The notes beneath the pieces were generated by a model that saw only the letters and a program-made list of their open reading frames with translations, searched no databases and had not been told where the DNA came from. Positions 9,572-21,092 of a stretch of DNA of 64,000 nucleotides are shown in pieces; the first letter of the stretch is position 1; the number at the start of each line of letters is the position of its first letter. The DNA lies in the NCBI GenBank assembly GCA_021613535.1, contig CP075497.1:11966001-12030000 (forward strand), given 5' to 3'. This stretch comes from Adineta vaga. Its lineage: Eukaryota > Animalia > Rotifera. Both the position numbers and the translations under genes were made by a program.

Positions 9572-12292
9572 TCAATTATGACATACCTTTGGATTTATAT
9601 GTAATTGTTGTTGAAGTCGATCAATTTTATCATTCTGTGATGTAATATGTTCATTCATCGATGCCAAATGTTCGGTCATTGTCACAATTTGTTCTTCATA
9701 GCCTTTAGTTGTCATTGATAATTCATCTTTCATCTTCGCTAATTCTACTTGTGATTGTTCAATTTCAGTTCGACATTTTGTTTCTTGATCTTTGGAATGT
9801 CTTAAACGTTGATGAATATTGGCTAACTAGAAAGTATATAGAGAATAAAGATGAGACGAAGAAGAGGAATGAAGATTTTGCTTACTTCATTATAAAATGC
9901 AATTCCTTTGCCATTAGCCAATTGTAGTTTTGTTTCTAAATCGAGGATTTTTTGTGAATAGTATTGTTTTATCATCATTTCACGTTCACTTGGTGGATCT
10001 GAACTTGTTCGAGCATCTCGTTGAAGATTTATTGTTGACTAAACAAAAATTATTTAGCATTTCTACTTCTCTCGATTATATTTACAGTAGTTGATGGAAT
10101 TGAAATAAGTTCATCTAATTGTTCATTTGTCGTCACTGTTTGATTGGTTTTATCTTTTAATTCTTCGATTTGTTTTGAATGATCATCACGCATTTTTTCA
10201 GATTTGATTTTTAATAATTGATATTCTAAACGCCAATGTTCTTTCTCTTGTTCAAGTGCACCAATTGTTTCTGCATTACAAAGAATCTTAATATGAAGAA
10301 AAATATTATAATGAATCGTGGAATTCATAGTCATTTTACTTGTTTTTTATGACTATCAATTAAATGTAGATGGGAATTGTCTGAGAAATCAATAAGATGA
10401 GCTTGATCTTGTTGTAACATTTCTTTTTGTCGTTTTTGAAGTTCAAAAAGATATGTTTGATTTTCTCGAAGTAAATGTGCGATCTAAATGAAATTTACAT
10501 CATTAGACAACAAAGAAACTAACGAATTCATTTACTTGTTGTTCAAGACTTGATAATTTTCTTAATGCTGCTAATATACATTCATCAGTTGTTGTTAGAT
10601 GTACTGGAGAAACAGTTAATTCATATTCTAAACATAATTTATCATTGTAATTTTTATCAAGATCTAAAGACAAAAAAAACGAGAATATTTGAAATTCAAA
10701 TGAGAATTAATTAAGCGTATACCACAATGAATAAGTGCACCGGCTTGAAATGCATTTAAGATTTCGGCAACTTTTGAATGAAGTTGATCAGCTGTATCGG
10801 GTAAGGATAAATCTAAGAAGAAGAAGAAAATATTTTCGCTAGTGTCTTCATGAAGTCGTATTAAGCTATATGTTTTACCGAATTGAATAATATCCGCACA
10901 TATTTCACGTAAATGAGATAAATTATTTGCCCATTGTTGAAATAATTGATTGAGCACATCATTTAAAATATCAATTTTTTCATAAATTTTTTCTTGATTA
11001 TTCGATGAAGAATTAACCTTTGGTTCATCACAAACACTATCAACAAGAATAAATCAAACTTTTCTATTCAAATCTATTTACCTTTTAATCGCAAGGGCAA
11101 GTACTTTTTCACATGATGAAACAAACATACTAAATAATTCGGCAAAACCTGTTGTATTATTATTCTCTAATAAACACTAAATAACAAAAAATAAAAATCA
11201 ATTTTAAACTTTCTTAATTGTCTACCTGTCCATCAAAAAGACGAAGTTTTAATTCGGTTAGAAAATTGTCTGCATGTTGTTGAAAAGCTTTCACTGTTTG
11301 AGCCATCTAAACAAGAAAAATCGTTTTGAATTAGATCAGAGACGAACGTATGAATTACTTTTTCATTATTTTCTGGAGAGCGATTATTATTTTTTAATCG
11401 TTCTTCAATATAAATTGTCAATTCTGTAAATGCATCTCGCCATGCGATTAAATATTTATATAAAAATATTTCAGGTTGAGGAGTTGGAGGTGATTCATTG
11501 ATAATCTTAGATGAACTATTTAAAATGGAACTGAAAGAAAAGAAATTTTGCGAAAAAAAAAGTGAAATATAAATACGAACGATTTGCGACTAATAGCAGT
11601 ACTGGATGGTTGATCAGTTAAATGTTGTTTAACTTGTTCATTAAGTAATTCATTTTCATGTTTGATTTGTTTTAATATTCGTTCATATTCATCTCGAGCA
11701 CGTTGATGACTTTCTTGCATTTCCGACATTTGATTTTGTAACTGTTCGATAACTGAACGATGACTTAATCGTTCATTTTCAGTGTCAGAAATTTGTTTTT
11801 CTAATTCATAAACCTCAATGGAAAAAAAGAACCTAGTCTCTATATTATAAGTAAGCAAGTGAAGTCTTACTCGACGATGCATTGATTCATATTGTTTGAT
11901 TTTTTGTTCAAGTTCTTGAGCAAGTATATTGTTATTAAACGGATTGTTTTGTGCTGTTTTATTGCTATTTGTTTTCTTTAATTTAGAGTTTGAATCATAT
12001 TCATTTAATTCATGTTGAAGAATTTCTAATCGAGATTGTAATTGGGTATTAAGAAATGTAAGAGTTTCAATTTCTTGTCCATTTCGTCTGATATTTTGGT
12101 CTCTACGATTAATATCTTCCTTTAAGAAGAAAATCATAATTAAAGATTAATCATCAATGGAAATTAAAGATTTACTTGAAATTGTTGATTTTTAGTTTGT
12201 TCATCAATAACAGCTTTCTTAAGAACTGTTACTTGTCCTCGAACTTTGGAGAATTCACTCGCTAATATTTGATATTTATTTTGTAAGTCCAT
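9572..12292 (-). CDS. PPP1R21: Protein phosphatase 1 regulatory subunit 21-like coiled-coil protein, multi-exon
   Basis: N-terminus MDLQNKYQILASEFSKVRGQVTVLKKAVIDEQ (KLRAQ-type motif) and C-terminal TTKGYEEQIVTMTEHLASMNE (TTKRSYEDQ-type motif). The 3' end is approximate. Confidence 0.8.
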
Positions 12293-12403: not shown

Positions 12404-13311
12404 TTATAATGTTAAACTTTGTAAAGCTGATTCGATAATAGGAACAAGATCCGGAATTGCTTCACGATATTTTTGAATAATTTGTTCACGTGCCCATTGA
12501 ATTTGTTCGATAAAACCTTGATTTTCATTCGAATTTTGTGTTCGAGAATTTGATGATGAATTTTTCATTGCAAGATTGCTCGATGTTAATATAACACCAT
12601 ATAAAGCACGAATACTTGTTGGATTGATTTTCAATGTACTGAAATAATACGTTCGAGCTTTTTCATAATCACCTTGAGAATAACGAATGGAAGCATAACG
12701 TTCATGATTTAAATGATTATGTGGATTGATTAAAAGAAGTTCTTCAGCACAAAAAGCAGCTTTTATATATTCATGTTCCGAGAGATAAAGATCACATAAT
12801 TCACTCCATGCTTCTTGATCAGCCTTTTAAGAAGAAGAAGAAAAAGAAGAATCAATAAAAAACAAATTCAAAAAGATTTTACTTGATAAAGTTCTAAATA
12901 TGTATTTAATTCACTAATTGCTTCACGTATTTGATTTTGTTCTTTTAAAAGACTAATTTGTCTCTTTCGAACAATCGCATCTGTTTCATTATCTTCCAAT
13001 AAATTTGAATAAATTTCTTCGGCCCGTTCAAAATCTTGTATTGATTCGTGATACATTGCATCTAATGTTGTTACACGACGACTTGTTGTTTTAAATTGTT
13101 TTTCTAATTGATCAAGACATTGACGAGCAATTGATTGTTTTGAACAATTTAATGCTGATTTGAATATTTGTTCAAGTATTAACCATTTTTCATCACCTAA
13201 TGATGATAAATTACGTTTGGATAAAACATCTGTCCATAGATCAACAATTTCATCATGTGAACGATGATTTTCATCGCGATATTTACGAAGTTTTTCAATA
13301 GCTGATTGCAT
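12404..13311 (-). CDS. EMC2: ER membrane protein complex subunit 2 (TPR protein), two coding exons
   Basis: LGDEKWLILEQI, TSRRV, IVRKRQI, ELNTYLELYQ/ADQEAWSELCDLY, AAFCAEELLLINPHN and SIRALYG match EMC2/TTC35. Confidence 0.88.
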
Positions 13312-15169
13312 TCGAGTTTGTTTTTTCTAAAGATAAAGTCAGAGCTATATTTTAAGATGAAAAAAAAACACACGCACACACACACATAGTCAACAAAGAG
13401 AAACGAAGCATGCATGCATCAATCCTTCTCCTTTTTTTTATCATCATCATCATCATCTTCTAACAGTTAGCAATTCTATTGGTTTAGAATTATAACCAAT
13501 ACAATGATGACTTTGATTTTATATTATACTATAATTGAATTTTTATTTCTATAAAAAAGTATTTTTATTATTTTTTAAATGAAAATATAAATTTGTTGAA
13601 TTAAAAGGAAAACTATAATTATCTAATCTAGTTTGAAACAACAGAGTGCTAAAGTACTTCATTGATTCATTCGATTGTGTGGAGAAATTTGAAGTTCATT
13701 ATTCGCACTTTATAATTATAATTCACTCGAACAAGAATATTCAATCAATCGATAATAATTGAGACTCAAAAAATCATTGCGACAATGGTTTTGGATTTAT
13801 TTATTTTAAATAAAAAATATCGTTTTTTTAAAGTTACAAACAGGTTTAATCGACATCGACAGCATCAAAAGATTTTTCTTTTGTTTTATTAAGATTAGGA
13901 ATGGACAAAGTTCAGTTCAATGAAATCTAAAAAGTATGTGCCGGTCCTACTGTAGAGAGGGAGGAAGTTAAAGACTTTACTTTGTCGCTATTCATAGATA
14001 GTGAGACCATATATTGTAGCAAGAACTCGTGGTAAAAGCCGATTCGAAGATGTGAACACAATGTTGTGTAGGGAAATGATTGACGTACATGAAACTGGAG
14101 AGCAGACATGCCATTTTTCCTCATGAAATAGGTTGAATCTAGTGTCCAATATCACTCTGCGAAAAACGTACGATAATTTTAGCTGATTTTGCGTTTCATT
14201 GAATGGCAAGATCGTTTTGTTTAGTTTATGTAATCGATTTTGTACGATAGCAGGTCCATTTAACATTGGATATGTTGGAGATCTGTGCAATAGAACACAC
14301 TTACGACGTTAGTCTCAGTCTCGTGATATTAAGGTAGTCACACGTCGCATTTATATACAAATAGAAGTCTAAATAAGCGCTCCGATTTTCGTTCATATTT
14401 CCTCATTTTTGCTTACAAAGGCAGCCATATGAACATCTCCAATGTATACAACACTGCTTAAACCACTTTTCTTTGCAAAATATGTATTTTTTTTCATGAA
14501 AAACCGTTTTCAATATAACTTTATTCAAAGACTTCAATCTCATATCACTTTCAAAGAATTTGCTGGGGAAGATTCTTGTTACAAGGAAACAACCTTTTTC
14601 ATTTAAGAATTGATTCAGAGCACATTACAGTAGAGTGGTAAAACGTATTATATACACAATTTTTCTTTGTTTTTTAATGCGACTAACTGCTATATTACGG
14701 ATGAGAGCTATGTATTGATAGATTTTTTTAATCTCCTTCATCCGTTAGTTCATCAGTATACTTCAACAAATATATACCGTGTGATTGGCGACAAGCTATA
14801 GTCGATTCATAAACAACCATTACTCTTTCAATTTGTCAACAAAGCACTTTTAATACGAATCACGAAGCTCAATCTCAACACTTTTCCTAAATAGTTGAAA
14901 AGCACGATGATTCTCTATATTATAGAATTTTCAGTCAGCATTCTTGATCAAAAAATATTTCTACGGTTATTACACTCGAATAAAATCTACTCAAAGATAT
15001 TTCATACAGATATCTAAGCAGTTCTTTAGTTCATATGAATGGGATTCGTGAACTTGAGCTTGTCTATCGCTAATTAAGATAAACAAATAAAGATATATTT
15101 GAAATAAAGTGAATATTCACACCTACACCCTTTAAGAAAAGAATTCTGTATCTCTGTTTGTATTATTGA

Positions 15170-17644
15170 TTAGACTGCTTGAGTCAAGCAAAGAATATAT
15201 GGAAAGCGATCATCATCCGTATTATAGAATTTGACGATATCCAAAGAATTTTTCTTCATTAACAAATGAATATCATCGTATGTATATTTCGTTGATAATT
15301 CTGTTTGTATTGCATCATAAGCTTCTAATTCCATGACAAAACCATGTTGATCTGTTACAGTTTGTTGTTTTGTACTAATTAACCAACTTTCCATTTGTCG
15401 ACGCAACGGATTATACATAGGATAATGTTGATAATTGCAGAGATCAAAATCGAAATTAAGTTCACGATTTAAACGAAGAAGAAGATTATAATTGAAAGCA
15501 GCAGTAACACCTTTTGAATCATTATAAGCTCGAATCATTGTTCTAGTATCTTTACATATGTCGAAGGCACATATGAACCAATCTCCAACTTGTAAATTTT
15601 GACGAATCGAACGAATTAATTGCACAACAGGTGCATCATCACCATATTTAATATCACTAGGTCCATAAGATGAGAAATTACCAACAGTACTACCCATTAA
15701 CATAACTACTTTGATTCCCATTGCATCCGTTCTTAACTTCGCATACATCTCATCAAATGTCGAGCAAATTGGTTTGACATGCTTTTGAATAAACTTTTCG
15801 CCCATCTTCTGCATTAACAATTGAGTAAGAGAATCGATTGCATGTTGAGATATATCAACTGGATGGTAGACCATTGATATTTCGTCTGTTGAATTAACCC
15901 AAGGTGTTAACCATGTTTCGACTTTTTTACCATCGCCACAACCAAGTTCAATGAAATGAATTGATGATGATGTACGAGAACTGAAGTCACTATGACGAAT
16001 AATCATCGATTTAATATCATTCACTTGTTGTTGAAGTAATCTCAATTCTTGATCGAATAAATAATATTCTTTCAATAGCGTAATTTGTGTATACAGAATG
16101 GAACCCTGTGCATCGTAAAAGTATTTCGAAGCAATTCTTCTATGTGCTTTATCGCTGAATCCCGTAATGATTTCCTGTCGATCTGATTCAGTAAGTGGAC
16201 TATCAGTATGATTAAAATGTTTGACGCATCGAAATGTCGCAAACATGTATTGATATGTATCTTGGTACCAATTACGAAATGATCTTCGAATCAATGTTAA
16301 ATCAGTAACGTAGGAACCACCTAATAATACGAAATGACGATCATCGAAAAAATCCGCTGAATATTCAGGATACGTTGGTAGAGCACTGCGATAACCAGAT
16401 AATGGTCGAAAGACACTTGATGTCCATTCAAATGCAGATCCTTGCCATTGCAATTGATTGCCAATTGTTGATTTCGTCGACATCGTGTGAAGATGACGAA
16501 AGTTAACATTACAATCATTATTCGTCAGACCTGCGCGTATACTATCCGACCAATCCCACATTGCATAGACCCATTCGGATTCAGTTGGCAATTCAATTTT
16601 TTCTCCGGTTTTGTTTGACATCCATCGACAGTAAGCTTTCGCTTCAATTTGACTTAGTATTACTGGATGATCGAATACAAATTCAACAGGAATATTTCGC
16701 TGTAATACAAAATTTACTCGATAGTAATCGTTCTTTTTCGTCCATGTAGCTGGATGATGTATGTCAGATTTTTTGATCCATTCGAAGACTGGCTCATCCC
16801 ACCAATCACTAGTGGTATAACCATCATCGAGTATAAATTGAAGAAAGTCGCCGTTTCGAACAGGATGTGATTGCATTTGAAAAGGAGACACAAAAGACGA
16901 TTCATGAGGAAATTCGTTATCCCATCCAAACGAAAATGTCGATGGCTGGTTACTATACGGCTTACCTAGGGAAGTGTGTCCGCCTGGTAATGTCACCCAG
17001 TTGTTTTCTAACAGTGAAGAAATAGGCGAAGTTTGACAAAGATCAAGTTCATTGATTAGATCTATTCGAAGACTTTCTATTGGTAATTGAACAAACAGAT
17101 ACATCAACGTTTCTTGATGTAACATTTCATGTTCCGTGGCAATATTGAGTACATTCAAAGTATGTAAATCGTTGAGGTCAAGATTGCCATTGTTCAAAAC
17201 ATGAAGAATTTGTTCTCGAACTTTTTGTTTGTATTCGATTACACTCTCTACAGTAAATGAACGCCAATAGCTTTCTTCTTCTTTAACATCTGTTGAGAAC
17301 CGACTAGAGTGCGTGTGTTCAACAGTTCCTGTCTGTACATTTGGATCAACACCACGTACAAATAAACTATCATAAACACTATCAATAACATCATTAACGC
17401 CATTTAGATGACGAAATTGCGTCCAACTAAAGCATGGTAAATGACCAAAATAAAATATCAATGGTAATCGAAGATTTATTGGTTGTTGATAATAGTCGTC
17501 GGACGAACGAAGTAATGAAAAAAGTCGATCGCTTCTATCCCATACTTGATTGAATTTATTTATCCAATGAGCTATGTCAAATTGTAGTTTTTCATCGATT
17601 TCCGACGAATAATGATTGTTTGGTAAGGATTCGATAGCATTCAT
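15170..17644 (-). CDS. Intronless bifunctional ergothioneine-biosynthesis-like protein: N-terminal DinB/FGE-type sulfoxide synthase (EgtB) fused to C-terminal histidine N-methyltransferase (EgtD)
   Basis: 824-aa ORF. EgtB part: LIFYFGHLP, FVRGVDP, iron motif EHEMLHQET, FGWDNE, LPTESEW, YPEYSADFFDDRHFVLLGGS, RSFRNWYQ, ATFRC. EgtD part: SKYFYDAQGS, EYY, ELGCGDGKK, GSTVGNF, AYNDSKGVTAAFNYNLLLRLNREL, TELSTKY. Confidence 0.88.
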   Translation of the reverse strand: MNAIESLPNNHYSSEIDEKLQFDIAHWINKFNQVWDRSDRLFSLLRSSDDYYQQPINLRLPLIFYFGHLPCFSWTQFRHLNGVNDVIDSVYDSLFVRGVDPNVQTGTVEHTHSSRFSTDVKEEESYWRSFTVESVIEYKQKVREQILHVLNNGNLDLNDLHTLNVLNIATEHEMLHQETLMYLFVQLPIESLRIDLINELDLCQTSPISSLLENNWVTLPGGHTSLGKPYSNQPSTFSFGWDNEFPHESSFVSPFQMQSHPVRNGDFLQFILDDGYTTSDWWDEPVFEWIKKSDIHHPATWTKKNDYYRVNFVLQRNIPVEFVFDHPVILSQIEAKAYCRWMSNKTGEKIELPTESEWVYAMWDWSDSIRAGLTNNDCNVNFRHLHTMSTKSTIGNQLQWQGSAFEWTSSVFRPLSGYRSALPTYPEYSADFFDDRHFVLLGGSYVTDLTLIRRSFRNWYQDTYQYMFATFRCVKHFNHTDSPLTESDRQEIITGFSDKAHRRIASKYFYDAQGSILYTQITLLKEYYLFDQELRLLQQQVNDIKSMIIRHSDFSSRTSSSIHFIELGCGDGKKVETWLTPWVNSTDEISMVYHPVDISQHAIDSLTQLLMQKMGEKFIQKHVKPICSTFDEMYAKLRTDAMGIKVVMLMGSTVGNFSSYGPSDIKYGDDAPVVQLIRSIRQNLQVGDWFICAFDICKDTRTMIRAYNDSKGVTAAFNYNLLLRLNRELNFDFDLCNYQHYPMYNPLRRQMESWLISTKQQTVTDQHGFVMELEAYDAIQTELSTKYTYDDIHLLMKKNSLDIVKFYNTDDDRFPYILCLTQAV

Positions 17645-18901
17645 TTTTACAGAATGAAATCAATATCAGTCTTAGGGCACACCTTTTATATGTCACATAA
17701 TACCAAGGATAAAAATAGATCGCATACTCATTGATAACAAATATTATTTCAGTAACTCGGTCATTTGTTACTGTATTATATAATACGTATAAGAATAAGA
17801 AACAATTGTCAAGACGACCTTTGTTAATTAATTGTATTCAAAACGACATAGGTTTTTTCGAATTTTCCTACACAACAATAGTGTCAACGGTTATGCTATT
17901 ATTTTTAAACAAATTTGATCGATTCTTTTTCAAATGATCGTAATAGAGAGATAATGTATTTCACAATGACGTTTTTCATCGTGATTCAATTCTGAGTACT
18001 TTCATGTAAAACGGAAGGAAAAAAAAGAAAAGATTAAAAAACTTATTTGTTGATTTATTTTTTACGTCCTATCTAGGAATAATTTCCAGATGTCATTTTA
18101 TGACTGTGCAGAACAAAGTTTCACAGAACAAAAAGAAGATATTTTTAACTTTGAGTGTAGTTGTGGATGGTTTCTTTTTTCCACATCTTTGAGAGTAGAA
18201 ATTGAGAAAAATGTGTAAGTTTCTCTCTCTGATAAATGACTTCGAAAACGTTTTGTATCAGATAGTTATTCAGTTAAAAATTGTATTTAATTGGAAAGTT
18301 TCTTTTTAGCAAAAGCAGTCGATAAAAGAGAGAATACCTAGAGGGAAAATGATGTTCTTAAAACAAATTATAATGTGAAAATAAAAAAAAACGAAGAAGA
18401 GTCATGATTCTCAACTGGAAGAAGACTATAGCGACAAACTTTCTTTCTTACGCCAAATATGTAATTAGTATCAAATTATCACTATAGTCATATCGAGTAT
18501 CTACGCTAGTAGTATAATGATTAATATCCAATCGTTCGTTAAAATCAGATTTTCTATGGTGTCAATGATATTAAAAAAATATTTATTACTTTATTTAATT
18601 AAACAAATCGAAATAAAAAATGAAACACGTGAATGAGCACGTGTTTGGTGTAAACGCATCCTATTTCGTTCTGCAACAGATCATAGAAAAGAAGAAATTA
18701 TTTCTATTCTTGTTGCTCCTGTCACAGAGTAAAAACGTAAATGACAGTATTTATAACATTAGTTATACGTAAACCATCATCGTCACGACTTGCTTTATTA
18801 ATTTCTCTACCAATATTATTATAAATAAAACATAGAAGAAAAATATACTTCGAGTATACGAAATATATTTCGTTCCGTAGATTTCATTTCAAGTGATCAA
18901 T

Positions 18902-21092
18902 ATGAGTACAACGAATTTTGTTGAATTTGATCAATCAAAATGTGTTGATAAAAAATATGGACATCAACATATTAGTAAATAATTTCTTTAGATTTCTGTA
19001 TTTTATTAACCAATTGATATTTAGTGTCATCATTCACAACTTATCCTATTGAAACAGTTCGAACTGAAGTTTTAAAAACGACAATTAAACCACCAACAAT
19101 TACACCTAAATATGATTCGAATACATCATCAACTGTTGTCGAATGGCATGTAAGTTCTATTTTACTAAAAGAATATTATTTTCAAGATAAGTTTTCCCAG
19201 GGTAAAAAAGACGTTCGAATTGCTCAACGACCTCGACCAATGATTACTGATGATAGCGATGCTATTATACATGTGACATCATCAACAATTTGTGGAAGTG
19301 ATTTACATATGTGTAAGAAATCATAGGTTTAATAAATATTGATTTTTATATATTTTGTATAGATACTGGTGATATGAAAGGCATGCTATCAAAAGATATT
19401 ATTGGTCATGAATGTAAGTTTTTTTTACAGCTTTATTTGTTAGAAGAAAAAAAATTTTATTTTAAAGGTATGGGTATTGTAGAAAGTATAGGTAGTAGTG
19501 TCAAGAATATTAAAGTTGGTGATCGAGTTGTTGTTAGTGCACCAATTGCTTGTGGACAATGTGAATGTAAGTCTTTTTTGTTTTTAATTAATAAAAATAT
19601 CTGAATTGTTTTGTTTATAGATTGCAAAACTGGTATGTTTTCATTATGTGATATTACAAATGATTCGAAAGTTATGGAAACACTCTATGGTCATCGAATT
19701 TGTGGAGCATTTGGTTATTCACATTTAACAGGTCATTGATAAAGAATATGAAGTGTTGAACAATATGTATTATTCCATTTTTTTAGGAGGTTATGATGGA
19801 TGTCAAGCTGAATGGGTTCGTGTCCCATTTGCTGATGTTAATCTATTGAAAATTGAAAATGATCGATTAACTGATGAACAAGTATTATTTCTTAGTGATA
19901 TTGTTTGTACTGGTAAGTTATTTTCCATGATTGATTTATTATTGACTGTGATATTATCGGTAAATATTGTAGCATGGCATGCTAATGTCTTAGGTGGAGT
20001 TGGTCCTGAAACGACTGTAGCTATCTGGTAAGTATTTACATCATTGCCTTTATGATTAATAATAAATGGTATGTAGGGGTGCTGGTCCAGTTGGTTTACT
20101 GACTATTATGTGGGCTAAATATCGAGGTGCAAAGCGTATCTTTTCTATTGATTGTGTTGAGGAACGTCTGGCTAAAGCTCGATCACAAGGTGCAGAAACA
20201 ATCGATTTTTCTAAACATAATGTAGTTGATACTATGCAAAAACTAATACCTGGTTGGAATTTTCTTAAATATTAGATAAAATATGAATTCTATGTTCTTT
20301 GAGTAGGTGGTCCTGATGTATGTGTTGATGCTGTTGGTTTCCGTTATACAAAAGGTTTGATTCATACTGTACAACGTGCTGTCTTTCTCGAAACAGATAC
20401 ACCTGAAATCTTAGCTGAAGCAGTTACTGTTGTTCGAAAAGGTGGAACTGTCGCAATTGTTGGAGATTAGTAAGTCATCAGATCTAATCATCTTTTCATA
20501 TCTCTTGTGTTTCTTTTCTAGCTTTTATAAATCGAATGCATTTCCGATCGGTGAGAGATATAAAAGATGAAGATTATTACATATCAAACTTTCTTTTATT
20601 TTCTAGGTGCTTTCATGGAAAAAGGTGAATACATATAAGTTTAATGATTTTTATATGAAATAATAATGTCTTTAGCTGTAACAATGCGAGGTGGTCAGTT
20701 ATACTGTCAAAGCTATTGGCATGATCTTCTTAAAATTATTGAAAATGGCGTAAATTATTCCTGTTTCTATTATATAAATAGAGAAATTATTTTATTTGGA
20801 TCTATTTTAGGAAGTTGATCCAACATTTATTATTACACATACAATGGATTTATCACAAGGTTCGTCAAAATATATAACTATTTATATCTATTTTTGATTT
20901 TCAATGATAATCTTCTAGCGGCTGAAGCTTATAAAAACTTTAATGACAAGTCAAATGGAACAATGTAAGTGATCGGTTAGATATTCTTTTATTAGGAATT
21001 CGTTATTATTCTATTTTAGCAAAGTAGTATTGAAAACTGCTTTTGCTGCTGTTCAACAGGCTACATCAGGTGTCACCACGAGCACAAAATAA
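18902..21092 (+). CDS. Zinc-dependent alcohol/formaldehyde dehydrogenase (MDR family, microbial glutathione-independent FDH-like), about 16 exons
   Basis: [13 protein letters not shown], structural-Zn [66 protein letters not shown]. About 15 short introns, including an 18-nt exon near 20607-20624. Confidence 0.85.

What the first reader, a model, noticed from the sequence alone, without database searches (positions are those of the whole stretch)
15170..17644. Animal-genome ergothioneine synthase candidate with reversed EgtB-EgtD fusion order
Seen: an intact intronless 824-aa ORF among intron-rich genes, with sulfoxide synthase then methyltransferase domains. Established: ergothioneine synthesis is known from bacteria and fungi, and animals take it up from diet. 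Fungal Egt1 has the methyltransferase at the N-terminus. Animal OvoA has a C-terminal methyltransferase of a different family. Here the C-terminal domain has EgtD motifs (KYFYD, AYND..GVTAAFN.NLL, TE.S.KY) and the N-terminal motifs (RGVDP...H.HS, GWDNE, YSADFFD) look Egt1-like rather than OvoA-like. Inference: a horizontally acquired antioxidant pathway, potentially relevant to desiccation or radiation tolerance. No EgtE/Egt2 C-S lyase is visible in this window.
Basis: partly seen in the sequence, partly recalled or inferred. Interest (0 to 1): 0.82.

Follow-up and report, generated by a model that had tools for sequence, protein, structure and literature searches.

The report
Rotifer EgtB–EgtD ergothioneine synthase gene
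An expressed, intronless gene of microbial origin in the bdelloid rotifer Adineta vaga fuses the two enzymes that build the precursor of the antioxidant ergothioneine, a compound animals are thought to obtain only from food.

Summary
Window 15170-17644 (-) is one 824-aa ORF. It has an N-terminal DinB_2 + FGE-sulfatase sulfoxide synthase and a C-terminal EgtD-type histidine methyltransferase.

- **Host:** the genome is Adineta vaga (100.8 Mb, 6 chromosomes).
- **Not a contaminant:** DNA contigs run from the ORF into AT-rich host flanks. Single-exon orthologues lie among animal genes in Adineta ricciae and Rotaria. GC3 is 0.26.
- **Selection and expression:** dN/dS is about 0.13-0.16. RNA-like contig sets cover only the ORF and the EMC2 exon, not the spacers.
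- **N-domain:** it is not OvoA. It keeps the iron triad, the catalytic Tyr and the hercynine-type pocket (SFRNWYQ, YSADFFD) shared with fungal Egt1 and EgtB-IV. A true OvoA lies elsewhere, on chromosome 3.
- **C-domain:** all EgtD histidine-binding residues are present.
- **Lyase:** two Egt2-like PLP enzymes, candidate lyases, are encoded on chromosomes 2 and 3.
- **Domain order:** the "reversed" order is not unique. It occurs as fusions in Plasmodiophora and some bacteria. It also occurs as egtB-stop-egtD pairs in many Acidobacteriota.
- **Donor:** unresolved.

Ergothioneine production itself is inferred, not shown.

Verdict: a new, animal-hosted member of a known enzyme kind.

The parts
15170..17644 (-). 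Complete single-exon coding sequence (824 aa plus stop) of the EgtB-EgtD fusion
   Evidence: RNA-like contigs lie collinear on it with no joints. AlphaFold model: mean pLDDT 84, pTM 0.74.
17108..17554 (-). DinB_2 four-helix domain (residues 31-179). It carries iron ligands H68, H172 and H176, plus R59, Y65 and D100.
   Evidence: Pfam. Residues were aligned to EgtB-IV 8vig and OvoA 8khq. They are invariant in alignment A1 and tabulated in the composite table.
16220..17005 (-). FGE-sulfatase (C-type lectin-like) domain (residues 214-475). It holds the catalytic Tyr425, Y428 and the hercynine pocket N458-W459-Y460.
   Evidence: Pfam. Alignments. Foldseek to EgtB-IV 8vig: TM 0.84 by target.
16181..16219 (-). 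Short inter-domain linker (residues 476-488). It sits where bacterial egtB ends (...FRCV..) and egtD begins.
15188..16180 (-). EgtD-type Methyltransf_33 domain (residues 489-819). It has SAM motif ELGCGDG and His-binding residues Y510, Y527/Y528, G651, T653, N656, Y707, T714, F717, N718, E782 and S784.
   Evidence: Foldseek to EgtD 4pin/4pip: TM 0.87-0.92, rmsd 2.1-2.9.
17683..17690 (-). TATAAAAG, 46 nt upstream of the ATG. It is a candidate eukaryotic TATA box (inference).
   Evidence: sequence read
15065..15169 (-). About 105 nt downstream of the stop that is still covered by RNA-like contigs. This is the probable 3' UTR.
   Evidence: X19 record 20 and X7 record 25 start at 15065/15134; sequence
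12868..13311 (-). Neighbouring EMC2 (TPR_EMC2) exon. It serves as host-gene context and as an internal control for the RNA-like runs.
   Evidence: Pfam. RNA-like contigs are cut at 12882 and run on into unlike sequence, as at a splice site.
19374..20275 (+). Neighbouring zinc alcohol dehydrogenase gene, split into several exon-like ORFs (host context).

Best explanation
The ORF is a bdelloid-rotifer gene that an ancestor of Adineta and Rotaria acquired horizontally from a microbe. It encodes one polypeptide with two enzymes of the aerobic ergothioneine pathway. The C-terminal EgtD domain would trimethylate the alpha-amino group of L-histidine with three SAM to give hercynine. The N-terminal non-haem-iron sulfoxide synthase is of the OvoA-like branch but has the hercynine-accepting pocket of EgtB type IV and fungal type III. 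It would couple hercynine C2 to free cysteine with O2, giving hercynylcysteine sulfoxide. A separate PLP C-S lyase would then release ergothioneine; candidates are the two Egt2-like class V enzymes on chromosomes 3 and 2. Shown here: gene structure, host integration, transcription-like coverage, purifying selection, domain identity, and conservation of catalytic and substrate-pocket residues. Inferred: the substrates, the regiochemistry, which lyase acts, and that the animal actually accumulates ergothioneine.
For: Domains and folds:
- Pfam, NCBIfam and PDB sequence hits.
- A confident AlphaFold model whose halves superpose on EgtB-IV (TM 0.84) and EgtD (TM 0.87-0.92).

Hercynine-type pocket:
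- The composite is R59 Y65 H68 D100 H172 H176 Y425 Y428 N458 W459 Y460.
- It is identical to that of fungal Egt1 and of 9 bacterial EgtB-IV-like proteins, and one conservative change (F->Y) from the EgtB-IV rule RxYH--DxHxHYxNWFx.
- It fails the OvoA rule ..HYF(Y/F)AF (rule from bioRxiv 10.1101/2024.04.10.588772).
- That paper states that histidine-accepting enzymes have Ala where hercynine-accepting ones have a bulky aromatic residue. This protein has Trp there.

EgtD domain:
- The histidine-binding residues are all conserved.

Other support:
- The genome has a separate true OvoA (576 and 189 bits, both over the cut-offs).
- Egt2-like lyase candidates retain the HKW lysine motif.
- Host integration: the window lies on a 13.9 Mb contig; the DNA run covers all 30 bins of the laid stretch; and 20 runs from 9 studies hold the stretch.
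- Orthologues are single-exon next to Forkhead, CysRS, GT10 and 7tm_1 genes.
- RNA-like contigs cover only the exons.
- dN/dS is 0.13-0.16 and GC3 is 0.26.
Against: - No chemistry was done.
- Scores lie below NCBIfam equivalog cut-offs for EgtD (220 vs 291), EgtB (197 vs 360) and OvoA_Nterm (243 vs 400). The protein therefore belongs to an uncharacterised subfamily on a long branch.
- Residue 460 is Y, not the F of the EgtB-IV rule.
- The loop holding Tyr425 and the rotifer-specific insert at 101-109 are modelled with low confidence.
- No EgtE equivalog exists in the genome, and the Egt2-like candidates are only 25-30% like N. crassa Egt2.
- The three 'RNA' runs are labelled RNA only by a guess. 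My reading of them as RNA rests on their exon-limited coverage.
- In Rotaria the closest paralogue has lost iron ligands, so the sulfoxide-synthase half is not indispensable in every copy.
Confidence: 0.77

Rival explanations
1. The fusion is active but makes something other than ergothioneine. The synthase might accept histidine or a partly methylated histidine, giving an ovothiol-like or mixed product. Alternatively the pathway might stop at hercynine or the sulfoxide because no dedicated lyase acts on it.
For: The N-domain is on the OvoA-like branch: ovoA_Nterm is its best NCBIfam model and OvoA 8khq scores 4e-46. All equivalog cut-offs are missed. There is no EgtE. New thiohistidine products are still being found in this enzyme family (PMC13674229).
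Against: The pocket residues N458 and W459 are those of hercynine-accepting enzymes and differ from the genome's own OvoA. Covalent fusion to an EgtD with an intact histidine pocket argues for hercynine as the intermediate. Egt2-like enzymes are present. EgtE is co-encoded with only 6.2% of such synthases anyway.
Confidence: 0.14
2. The gene is a decaying or neutral horizontal acquisition with no current function.
For: Some bdelloid copies have lost catalytic residues: P0004 H172Q, P0005 D100N/H176Y, and P0023 in both domains. Depth in the RNA-like runs is about a tenth of EMC2's, though contig depth is a poor measure of expression.
Against: The A. vaga, A. ricciae and A. steineri copies and one Rotaria clade keep every catalytic residue. 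dN/dS is 0.13-0.16 over 824 codons. The frame is intact across genera. Coverage looks like transcription.
Confidence: 0.05
3. The ORF comes from a contaminant (fungus, protist or bacterium) mis-joined into the assembly.
For: It is intronless, and its nearest relatives outside rotifers are microbial. One DNA contig in run X1 joins 13620 to 18021, skipping the gene, but on a side of only 21 nt.
Against: DNA contigs bridge the ORF into both flanks: 14716-17186 and 17247-18026. Depth over the gene (38) matches the flanks. Twenty runs from 9 studies hold it. GC is 35.5% and GC3 0.26, like the host. Orthologues sit among animal genes in four other bdelloid assemblies.
Confidence: 0.02
4. It is a divergent member of the metazoan OvoA family, that is, an ovothiol synthase.
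For: It shares the DinB_2 + FGE-sulfatase + C-terminal methyltransferase layout. OvoA 8khq is the first Foldseek hit for the whole model.
Against: The C-terminal domain is EgtD (Methyltransf_33), not ovoA_Cterm. The genome's real OvoA scores only 105 bits against the N-domain and sits on a 4.8-substitution branch. The pocket differs.
Confidence: 0.01

Closest known systems
Fungal Egt1 (bifunctional EgtD + type III EgtB; e.g. the Mortierella, Glomus and Calcarisporiella proteins P0068, P0070, P0090)
   Same: One polypeptide carries both activities. The 11-residue active-site composite RYHDHHYYNWY is identical, as are the SFRNWYQ and YSADFFD motifs. Cysteine, not gamma-glutamylcysteine, is the expected sulfur donor. 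It needs a separate Egt2 lyase.
   Different: The domain order is opposite: EgtD is N-terminal in fungi. The EgtD halves are far apart (52-57 bits, against up to 173 for bacterial EgtD). A rotifer+fungi clade is neither supported nor rejected (SH-aLRT 84 on the N-domain only; AU p 0.20 and 0.29).
Cyanobacterial EgtB type IV (PDB 8vig, 8vih) with a separate EgtD
   Same: It is the best solved-structure match of the N-domain (9e-50; Foldseek TM 0.84). It is on the OvoA-like branch but hercynine-accepting, with the N-W pocket.
   Different: It is a stand-alone enzyme. It has F where the rotifer has Y460. The rotifer clade has an extra insert after GVDP (residues 101-125).
EgtB->EgtD fusions of Plasmodiophora brassicae (P0030; P0029 carries an added N-terminal PLP domain) and of bacteria (P0033, P0034); also egtB-stop-egtD pairs of Acidobacteriota
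   Same: Same domain order and a short junction. The concatenated tree puts rotifers next to Plasmodiophora and P0031 (SH-aLRT 86).
   Different: Only 31-34% identical. The bacterial fusions nest inside bacterial clades, so they are independent fusions. The hosts are microbes, not an animal.
OvoA (5-histidylcysteine sulfoxide synthase), including the copy in this same genome (chromosome 3)
   Same: Same two-domain synthase fold followed by a C-terminal SAM methyltransferase. It was also horizontally acquired in bdelloids, according to Gerdol et al. 2019 as cited in PMC8433421.
   Different: The methyltransferase belongs to a different family (TIGR04345). OvoA has a histidine pocket rather than a hercynine pocket. 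It sulfurises C5 rather than C2.

Membership tests
EgtD, L-histidine N-alpha-methyltransferase (Pfam Methyltransf_33 / TIGR03438) | Full-length match to the family profile | tested here: met
   PF10017 scores 230 bits (cut-off 23) and covers 2-302 of 304 positions.
EgtD, L-histidine N-alpha-methyltransferase (Pfam Methyltransf_33 / TIGR03438) | Score over the NCBIfam equivalog cut-off | tested here: not met
   TIGR03438 scores 220 bits against a cut-off of 291, so this is a divergent subfamily.
EgtD, L-histidine N-alpha-methyltransferase (Pfam Methyltransf_33 / TIGR03438) | Histidine-binding residues of M. smegmatis EgtD (Y39, Y56, G161, T163, N166, Y206, T213, F216, E282, S284; list from my knowledge of the EgtD structures) | tested here: met
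   The alignment to 4pim and the column table give Y510, Y528, G651, T653, N656, Y707, T714, F717, E782 and S784. The M252 equivalent is Ser, as in 37 of 48 bacterial EgtD sampled.
EgtD, L-histidine N-alpha-methyltransferase (Pfam Methyltransf_33 / TIGR03438) | Fold | tested here: met
   Foldseek TM 0.87-0.92 and rmsd 2.1-2.9 A to 4pin, 4pio and 4pip.
EgtD, L-histidine N-alpha-methyltransferase (Pfam Methyltransf_33 / TIGR03438) | Trimethylation of histidine to hercynine | not testable with these tools
   Needs an enzyme assay.
Hercynine-accepting sulfoxide synthase of the OvoA-like branch (EgtB type IV / fungal type III) | DinB_2 + FGE-sulfatase architecture with a 3-His iron site and a catalytic Tyr | tested here: met
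   H68, H172, H176 and Y425.
Hercynine-accepting sulfoxide synthase of the OvoA-like branch (EgtB type IV / fungal type III) | Composite motif RxYH--DxHxHYxNWFx (Kayrouz et al. preprint) | tested here: inconclusive
   All ten fixed positions that I could map match except the last, where F is Y460. The same NWY variant is found in fungal Egt1 and in 9 of 40 bacterial relatives. I mapped the positions from pairwise alignments, not from the authors' alignment.
Hercynine-accepting sulfoxide synthase of the OvoA-like branch (EgtB type IV / fungal type III) | Closer to EgtB-IV than to EgtB-I/II in sequence and structure | tested here: met
   EgtB-IV scores 173 bits, against 72 for type II and 67 for type I. 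Foldseek gives 1.6e-27 against about 1e-19.
Hercynine-accepting sulfoxide synthase of the OvoA-like branch (EgtB type IV / fungal type III) | C2 sulfurisation of hercynine with cysteine | not testable with these tools
   Needs an assay and NMR or MS of the product.
OvoA | ovoA_Nterm equivalog score | tested here: not met
   243 bits against a cut-off of 400. The genome's real OvoA scores 576.
OvoA | C-terminal OvoA methyltransferase (TIGR04345) | tested here: not met
   It is absent from this protein and present in the chromosome 3 gene.
OvoA | Small residue (Ala) in the histidine pocket, motif (Y/F)AF | tested here: not met
   The protein has N458-W459-Y460.
Fungal Egt1 | EgtD domain N-terminal to the EgtB domain | tested here: not met
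   The order is reversed.
Fungal Egt1 | Placement inside the fungal clade | tested here: inconclusive
   Rotifers form their own 100%-supported clade. They are sister to fungi only on the N-domain tree (84). The AU test does not reject the grouping.
Horizontally transferred gene in a bdelloid | Physically within host DNA, absent from other animals, nested among non-animal sequences, conserved in the recipient clade | tested here: met
   Absence from other animals rests on the word-indexed search, which would list fusions scoring over about 211 bits.

The most novel reading that the evidence does not exclude
Bdelloid rotifers make ergothioneine themselves. That would be the first documented endogenous synthesis in an animal. 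They would run it beside a separately acquired ovothiol pathway, giving them both thiol-histidine antioxidants, which would contribute to their tolerance of desiccation and ionising radiation.
Probability: 0.5. Interest if true: 0.75.

Novelty: new member of a known kind. Interest (0 to 1): 0.6.

Why it matters
Ergothioneine is generally held to be made only by fungi and certain bacteria, and to reach animals through diet and a dedicated transporter (my knowledge of the field). A conserved, selected and apparently transcribed EgtB-EgtD gene in an animal genome makes that rule directly testable. Labelled-histidine feeding or a recombinant enzyme assay would settle it. It would add a defined small-molecule antioxidant route to the explanations of bdelloid stress tolerance. 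It also shows that one animal lineage took up both thiol-histidine pathways, ovothiol and ergothioneine, by separate transfers. For enzymology, it supplies a eukaryote-adapted single-chain enzyme of the little-studied NWY pocket variant. It also illustrates that the EgtB->EgtD fusion arises repeatedly from operons that are one stop codon away from it.

Tried and rejected
- **EgtE search:** an EgtE equivalog (TIGR04343) in the genome gave only weak class V hits (35 bits or less).
- **PLP domain search:** the PLP domain of Plasmodiophora P0029, used as a query, found three generic class I/II aminotransferases with no specific C-S lyase signal. I did not follow these further.
- **Contig look-up:** The look-up of encoding contigs had no record for the window's own protein.
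- **Donor inference failed:**
  - The N-domain tree pairs rotifers with fungi (84).
  - The C-domain tree leaves them in a polytomy with Plasmodiophora and bacteria.
  - The concatenated tree pairs them with Plasmodiophora and P0031 (86).
  - The AU test with the mixture model was killed by the sandbox. Under LG+G4 it does not reject rotifers+fungi (p 0.20 and 0.29).
- **Bacterial loci:** all 80 best loci show egtB and egtD in one frame. I treat that uniformity as a ranking bias of tblastn, not biology.
- **X1 joint:** the joint 13620->18021 in DNA run X1 was checked for flanking repeats and none was found. With a 21-nt side and even depth, I regard it as an artefact.
- **Papers not held:** Gerdol et al. 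2019 and Ireland et al. 2024. One literature query timed out.
- **Not used:** the big representative search. The word search and family scans left nothing open.
Full report
**The object**

The window carries one uninterrupted ORF at 15170..17644 on the minus strand: 824 codons with an ATG start. The surrounding DNA is about 30% G+C. At that composition about 8% of random codons are stops, so an open run this long has a chance of roughly 1e-30 (my calculation).

Pfam finds three domains in this order:
- DinB_2, residues 31-179
- FGE-sulfatase, residues 214-475, E 2e-29
- Methyltransf_33, residues 489-819, E 3.8e-68, covering the whole profile

**Host and integration**

The genome is 100.8 Mb in 6 contigs, and the window is C6:11966001-12030000. 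Two other genes of this genome carry NCBI names from Adineta vaga.

The neighbours are fragmented, exon-like pieces of ordinary animal genes:
- an EMC2 TPR exon at 12868-13311 (-)
- a KLRAQ coiled-coil exon at 11520-12137 (-)
- zinc alcohol dehydrogenase pieces at 19374-20275 (+)

Twenty public runs from nine studies hold the stretch. I laid four of them on 12800-18700.
- The DNA run covers all 30 bins at even depth: 38 over the gene and 35-46 beside it. Its contigs run from the ORF into both flanks.
- The three runs guessed to be RNA cover only the EMC2 exon and 15065-17634, with nothing in either spacer. On the EMC2 exon they are cut exactly at 12882, where the contigs run on into unlike sequence, as at a splice site.
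- That exon-limited pattern is what transcripts give, and no joint falls inside the ORF.

A TATAAAAG lies 46 nt upstream of the ATG.

**Conservation in bdelloids**

Full-length orthologues at 56-80% identity exist in Adineta ricciae, A. steineri, Rotaria sordida, R. magnacalcarata and two unnamed Rotaria species. More come from unnamed environmental contigs.
- In A. ricciae and Rotaria sp. Silwood2 the gene is again a single exon. It lies among animal genes: Forkhead, cysteinyl-tRNA synthetase, a GT10 fucosyltransferase, an aldo-keto reductase, VWA and a 7tm_1 receptor. One of these contigs is 992 kb long.
- A. vaga against A. ricciae gives dN 0.128, dS 0.83-1.02 and dN/dS 0.13-0.16.
- GC3 is 0.26 in A. 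vaga and 0.125 in Rotaria, so composition is fully that of the host.
- No other animal appears among the 120 listed hits. The same database holds Brachionus and many other invertebrates.

Contamination and pseudogene readings are therefore very unlikely.

**The N-terminal enzyme**

- Against solved structures the best matches are EgtB type IV (8vig, 9e-50) and OvoA (8khq, 4e-46). Types II and I of EgtB are far behind at about 1e-19 and 1e-17.
- NCBIfam ranks ovoA_Nterm first (243 bits), but this is well under its cut-off of 400.
- The genome has a genuine OvoA elsewhere, at chromosome 3, 3555071-3556399. It scores 576 bits on ovoA_Nterm and 189 on ovoA_Cterm, both over their cut-offs.
- That protein scores only 105 bits against the N-domain here. 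It is presumably the bdelloid OvoA whose bacterial origin Gerdol et al. reported, as cited in PMC8433421.
- Kayrouz et al. (bioRxiv 10.1101/2024.04.10.588772) compress the active site of this enzyme family into composite motifs. They note that histidine-accepting enzymes have Ala where hercynine-accepting ones have a bulky aromatic residue.
- Mapped through the pairwise alignments and my own alignment, this protein reads R59 Y65 H68 D100 H172 H176 Y425 Y428 N458 W459 Y460.
- This fits the EgtB-IV rule except F->Y at the last position. It is identical to five of six fungal-type proteins, to Plasmodiophora and to 9 of 40 bacterial relatives.
- The genome's own OvoA instead reads ..YFFHF.
- The local motifs SFRNWYQ and YSADFFD are shared with fungal Egt1 and bacterial relatives but not with OvoA.

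**The C-terminal enzyme**

- The best solved relatives are the EgtD proteins of Mycobacterium (4.5e-29).
- The SAM motif is conserved. So is every histidine-contacting residue I know from the EgtD structures: Y510, Y528, G651, T653, N656, Y707, T714, F717, E782 and S784.
- The position of M252 is Ser, as in most bacterial EgtD sampled.

**Structure**

An AlphaFold model built on a 56-sequence alignment has mean pLDDT 84 and pTM 0.74. Low confidence is confined to the N-terminus, the rotifer-specific insert at 101-109 and the loop around Tyr425. Foldseek superposes the N-half on EgtB-IV (TM 0.84 by target) and the C-half on EgtD (TM 0.87-0.92, rmsd 2.1-2.9 A).

**Mechanism proposed**

- Histidine is trimethylated to hercynine by the C-domain.
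- Hercynine is coupled at C2 to free cysteine by the iron-dependent N-domain. The thiol-side residues R59, Y65 and D100 are those of the cysteine-using OvoA and EgtB-IV branch, not the Arg pair of the gamma-glutamylcysteine-using type I.
- A PLP lyase then releases ergothioneine.

The steps up to residue conservation are shown. The chemistry is inferred.

**The lyase**

No EgtE equivalog exists in the genome. Two uninterrupted class V PLP ORFs both have N. crassa Egt2, the hercynylcysteine sulfoxide lyase, as their best solved relative. Both keep the HKW lysine motif.

| Candidate | Locus | Size | Chromosome position | E-value to Egt2 |
|---|---|---|---|---|
| L005 | L005:991-2349 | 452 aa | chromosome 3, about 3.118 Mb | 5.8e-28 |
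| L006 | L006:1066-2313 | 415 aa | chromosome 2, about 5.094 Mb | 1.8e-25 |

- L005 belongs to a family spread through molluscs, echinoderms, sharks, brachiopods, amphioxus, sponges, Trichoplax and Brachionus.
- L006's nearest neighbours by language-model features are fungal PLP clusters. This is a lead only.
- Dedicated lyases are co-encoded with only 6.2% of such synthases in bacteria (PMC13674229), so the absence of a lyase from this window says little.

**Is the reversed order new?**

No.
- Fungal proteins do have EgtD first.
- EgtB->EgtD single chains exist in Plasmodiophora brassicae (one gene model adds an N-terminal PLP domain), in a EukProt transcript and in metagenomic proteins.
- One of these metagenomic proteins lies on a plainly bacterial contig next to MerR, HMA and RsmJ genes.
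- A scan of bacterial genomes returned 80 loci, mostly Acidobacteriota. In them egtB is followed at once by egtD, and in 71 loci only the egtB stop codon separates the two open frames.
- That uniform frame is probably a ranking bias. It nonetheless shows the fusion is one stop-loss away.
- The true bacterial fusions P0033 and P0034 nest inside separate bacterial clades.
- The literature already says that most EgtB homologues are co-encoded with or fused to EgtD (PMC8433421).

**Origin**

In all three trees the bdelloid sequences form one clade with full support on a long stem.

| Tree | Position of the bdelloid clade | Support (SH-aLRT) |
|---|---|---|
| N-domain | sister to fungi | 84 |
| C-domain | polytomy with Plasmodiophora and bacteria | unresolved |
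| Concatenated | next to Plasmodiophora and P0031 | 86 |

- AU tests do not reject a rotifer+fungi group (p 0.20 and 0.29 under LG+G4).
- The donor is therefore unknown.
- The shared domain order makes a B->D source (bacterial operon or fusion, or a protist fusion) more economical than a permuted fungal gene. This is inference.

**Prior knowledge**

Full-text searches found no paper holding both 'ergothioneine' and 'Adineta'. None of those holding 'ergothioneine' with 'bdelloid' or 'rotifer' describes such a gene. Databases name the orthologues only as domain-containing proteins. The scan's own notes hold nothing on it.

**Verdict**

This is a real, expressed, selected and horizontally acquired EgtB-EgtD gene in an animal. 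The enzyme kind is known, but the host is unexpected. It is a new member of a known kind and is of above-average interest, because it makes the statement 'animals do not make ergothioneine' directly testable.

Noticed in passing
G000:C3:3555071-3556399 (L002:712-2955, minus strand): A bona fide, uninterrupted OvoA (747 aa in the listed ORF; ovoA_Nterm 576 bits, ovoA_Cterm 189 bits) in the same genome. The animal therefore encodes both thiol-histidine synthases. Its pocket reads R-F-H-F where the OvoA rule has (Y/F)-A-F.
   Followed up: partly
G000:C3 about 3.118 Mb (L005:991-2349, minus strand): An Egt2-like class V PLP enzyme (452 aa). It belongs to an animal-wide family found in molluscs, echinoderms, sharks, brachiopods, amphioxus, sponge, Trichoplax and Brachionus (39-46% identity). 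These taxa resemble those reported to keep OvoA, so the family is a candidate for the sulfoxide lyase that has not been identified in animals.
   Followed up: partly
G000:C2 about 5.094 Mb (L006:1066-2313, minus strand): A second Egt2-like class V PLP ORF (415 aa, UJR26025.1). It is 25% identical to the first, and its language-model neighbours are fungal clusters. It may be another foreign gene.
   Followed up: partly
Proteins P0004, P0005, P0023 (Rotaria sp. Silwood2, R. sordida, a metagenome): The Rotaria paralogue closest to the A. vaga gene has lost iron ligands (H172Q; D100N + H176Y) while its EgtD residues are intact. A second Rotaria paralogue clade keeps everything. P0023 is degenerate in both domains.
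   Followed up: partly
Loci L018-L097 (mostly Acidobacteriota MAGs): egtB is followed by egtD in the same frame in all 80 loci. In 71 of them a single stop codon lies between the frames, and the egtD ribosome-binding site sits inside the last egtB codons. The uniformity is probably a ranking bias, but the tight junction explains recurrent fusions.
   Followed up: partly
window 13620 and 18021: One contig of DNA run X1 joins these two places, skipping 4.4 kb that includes the whole gene. One side is only 21 nt. There are no flanking repeats and depth is even across the gene.
   Followed up: yes
Protein P0029 (Plasmodiophora brassicae): A 1173-aa gene model with a class I/II PLP domain, then EgtB, then EgtD. 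If real, it would hold all three activities in one chain. The shorter model P0030 lacks the PLP part.
   Followed up: no
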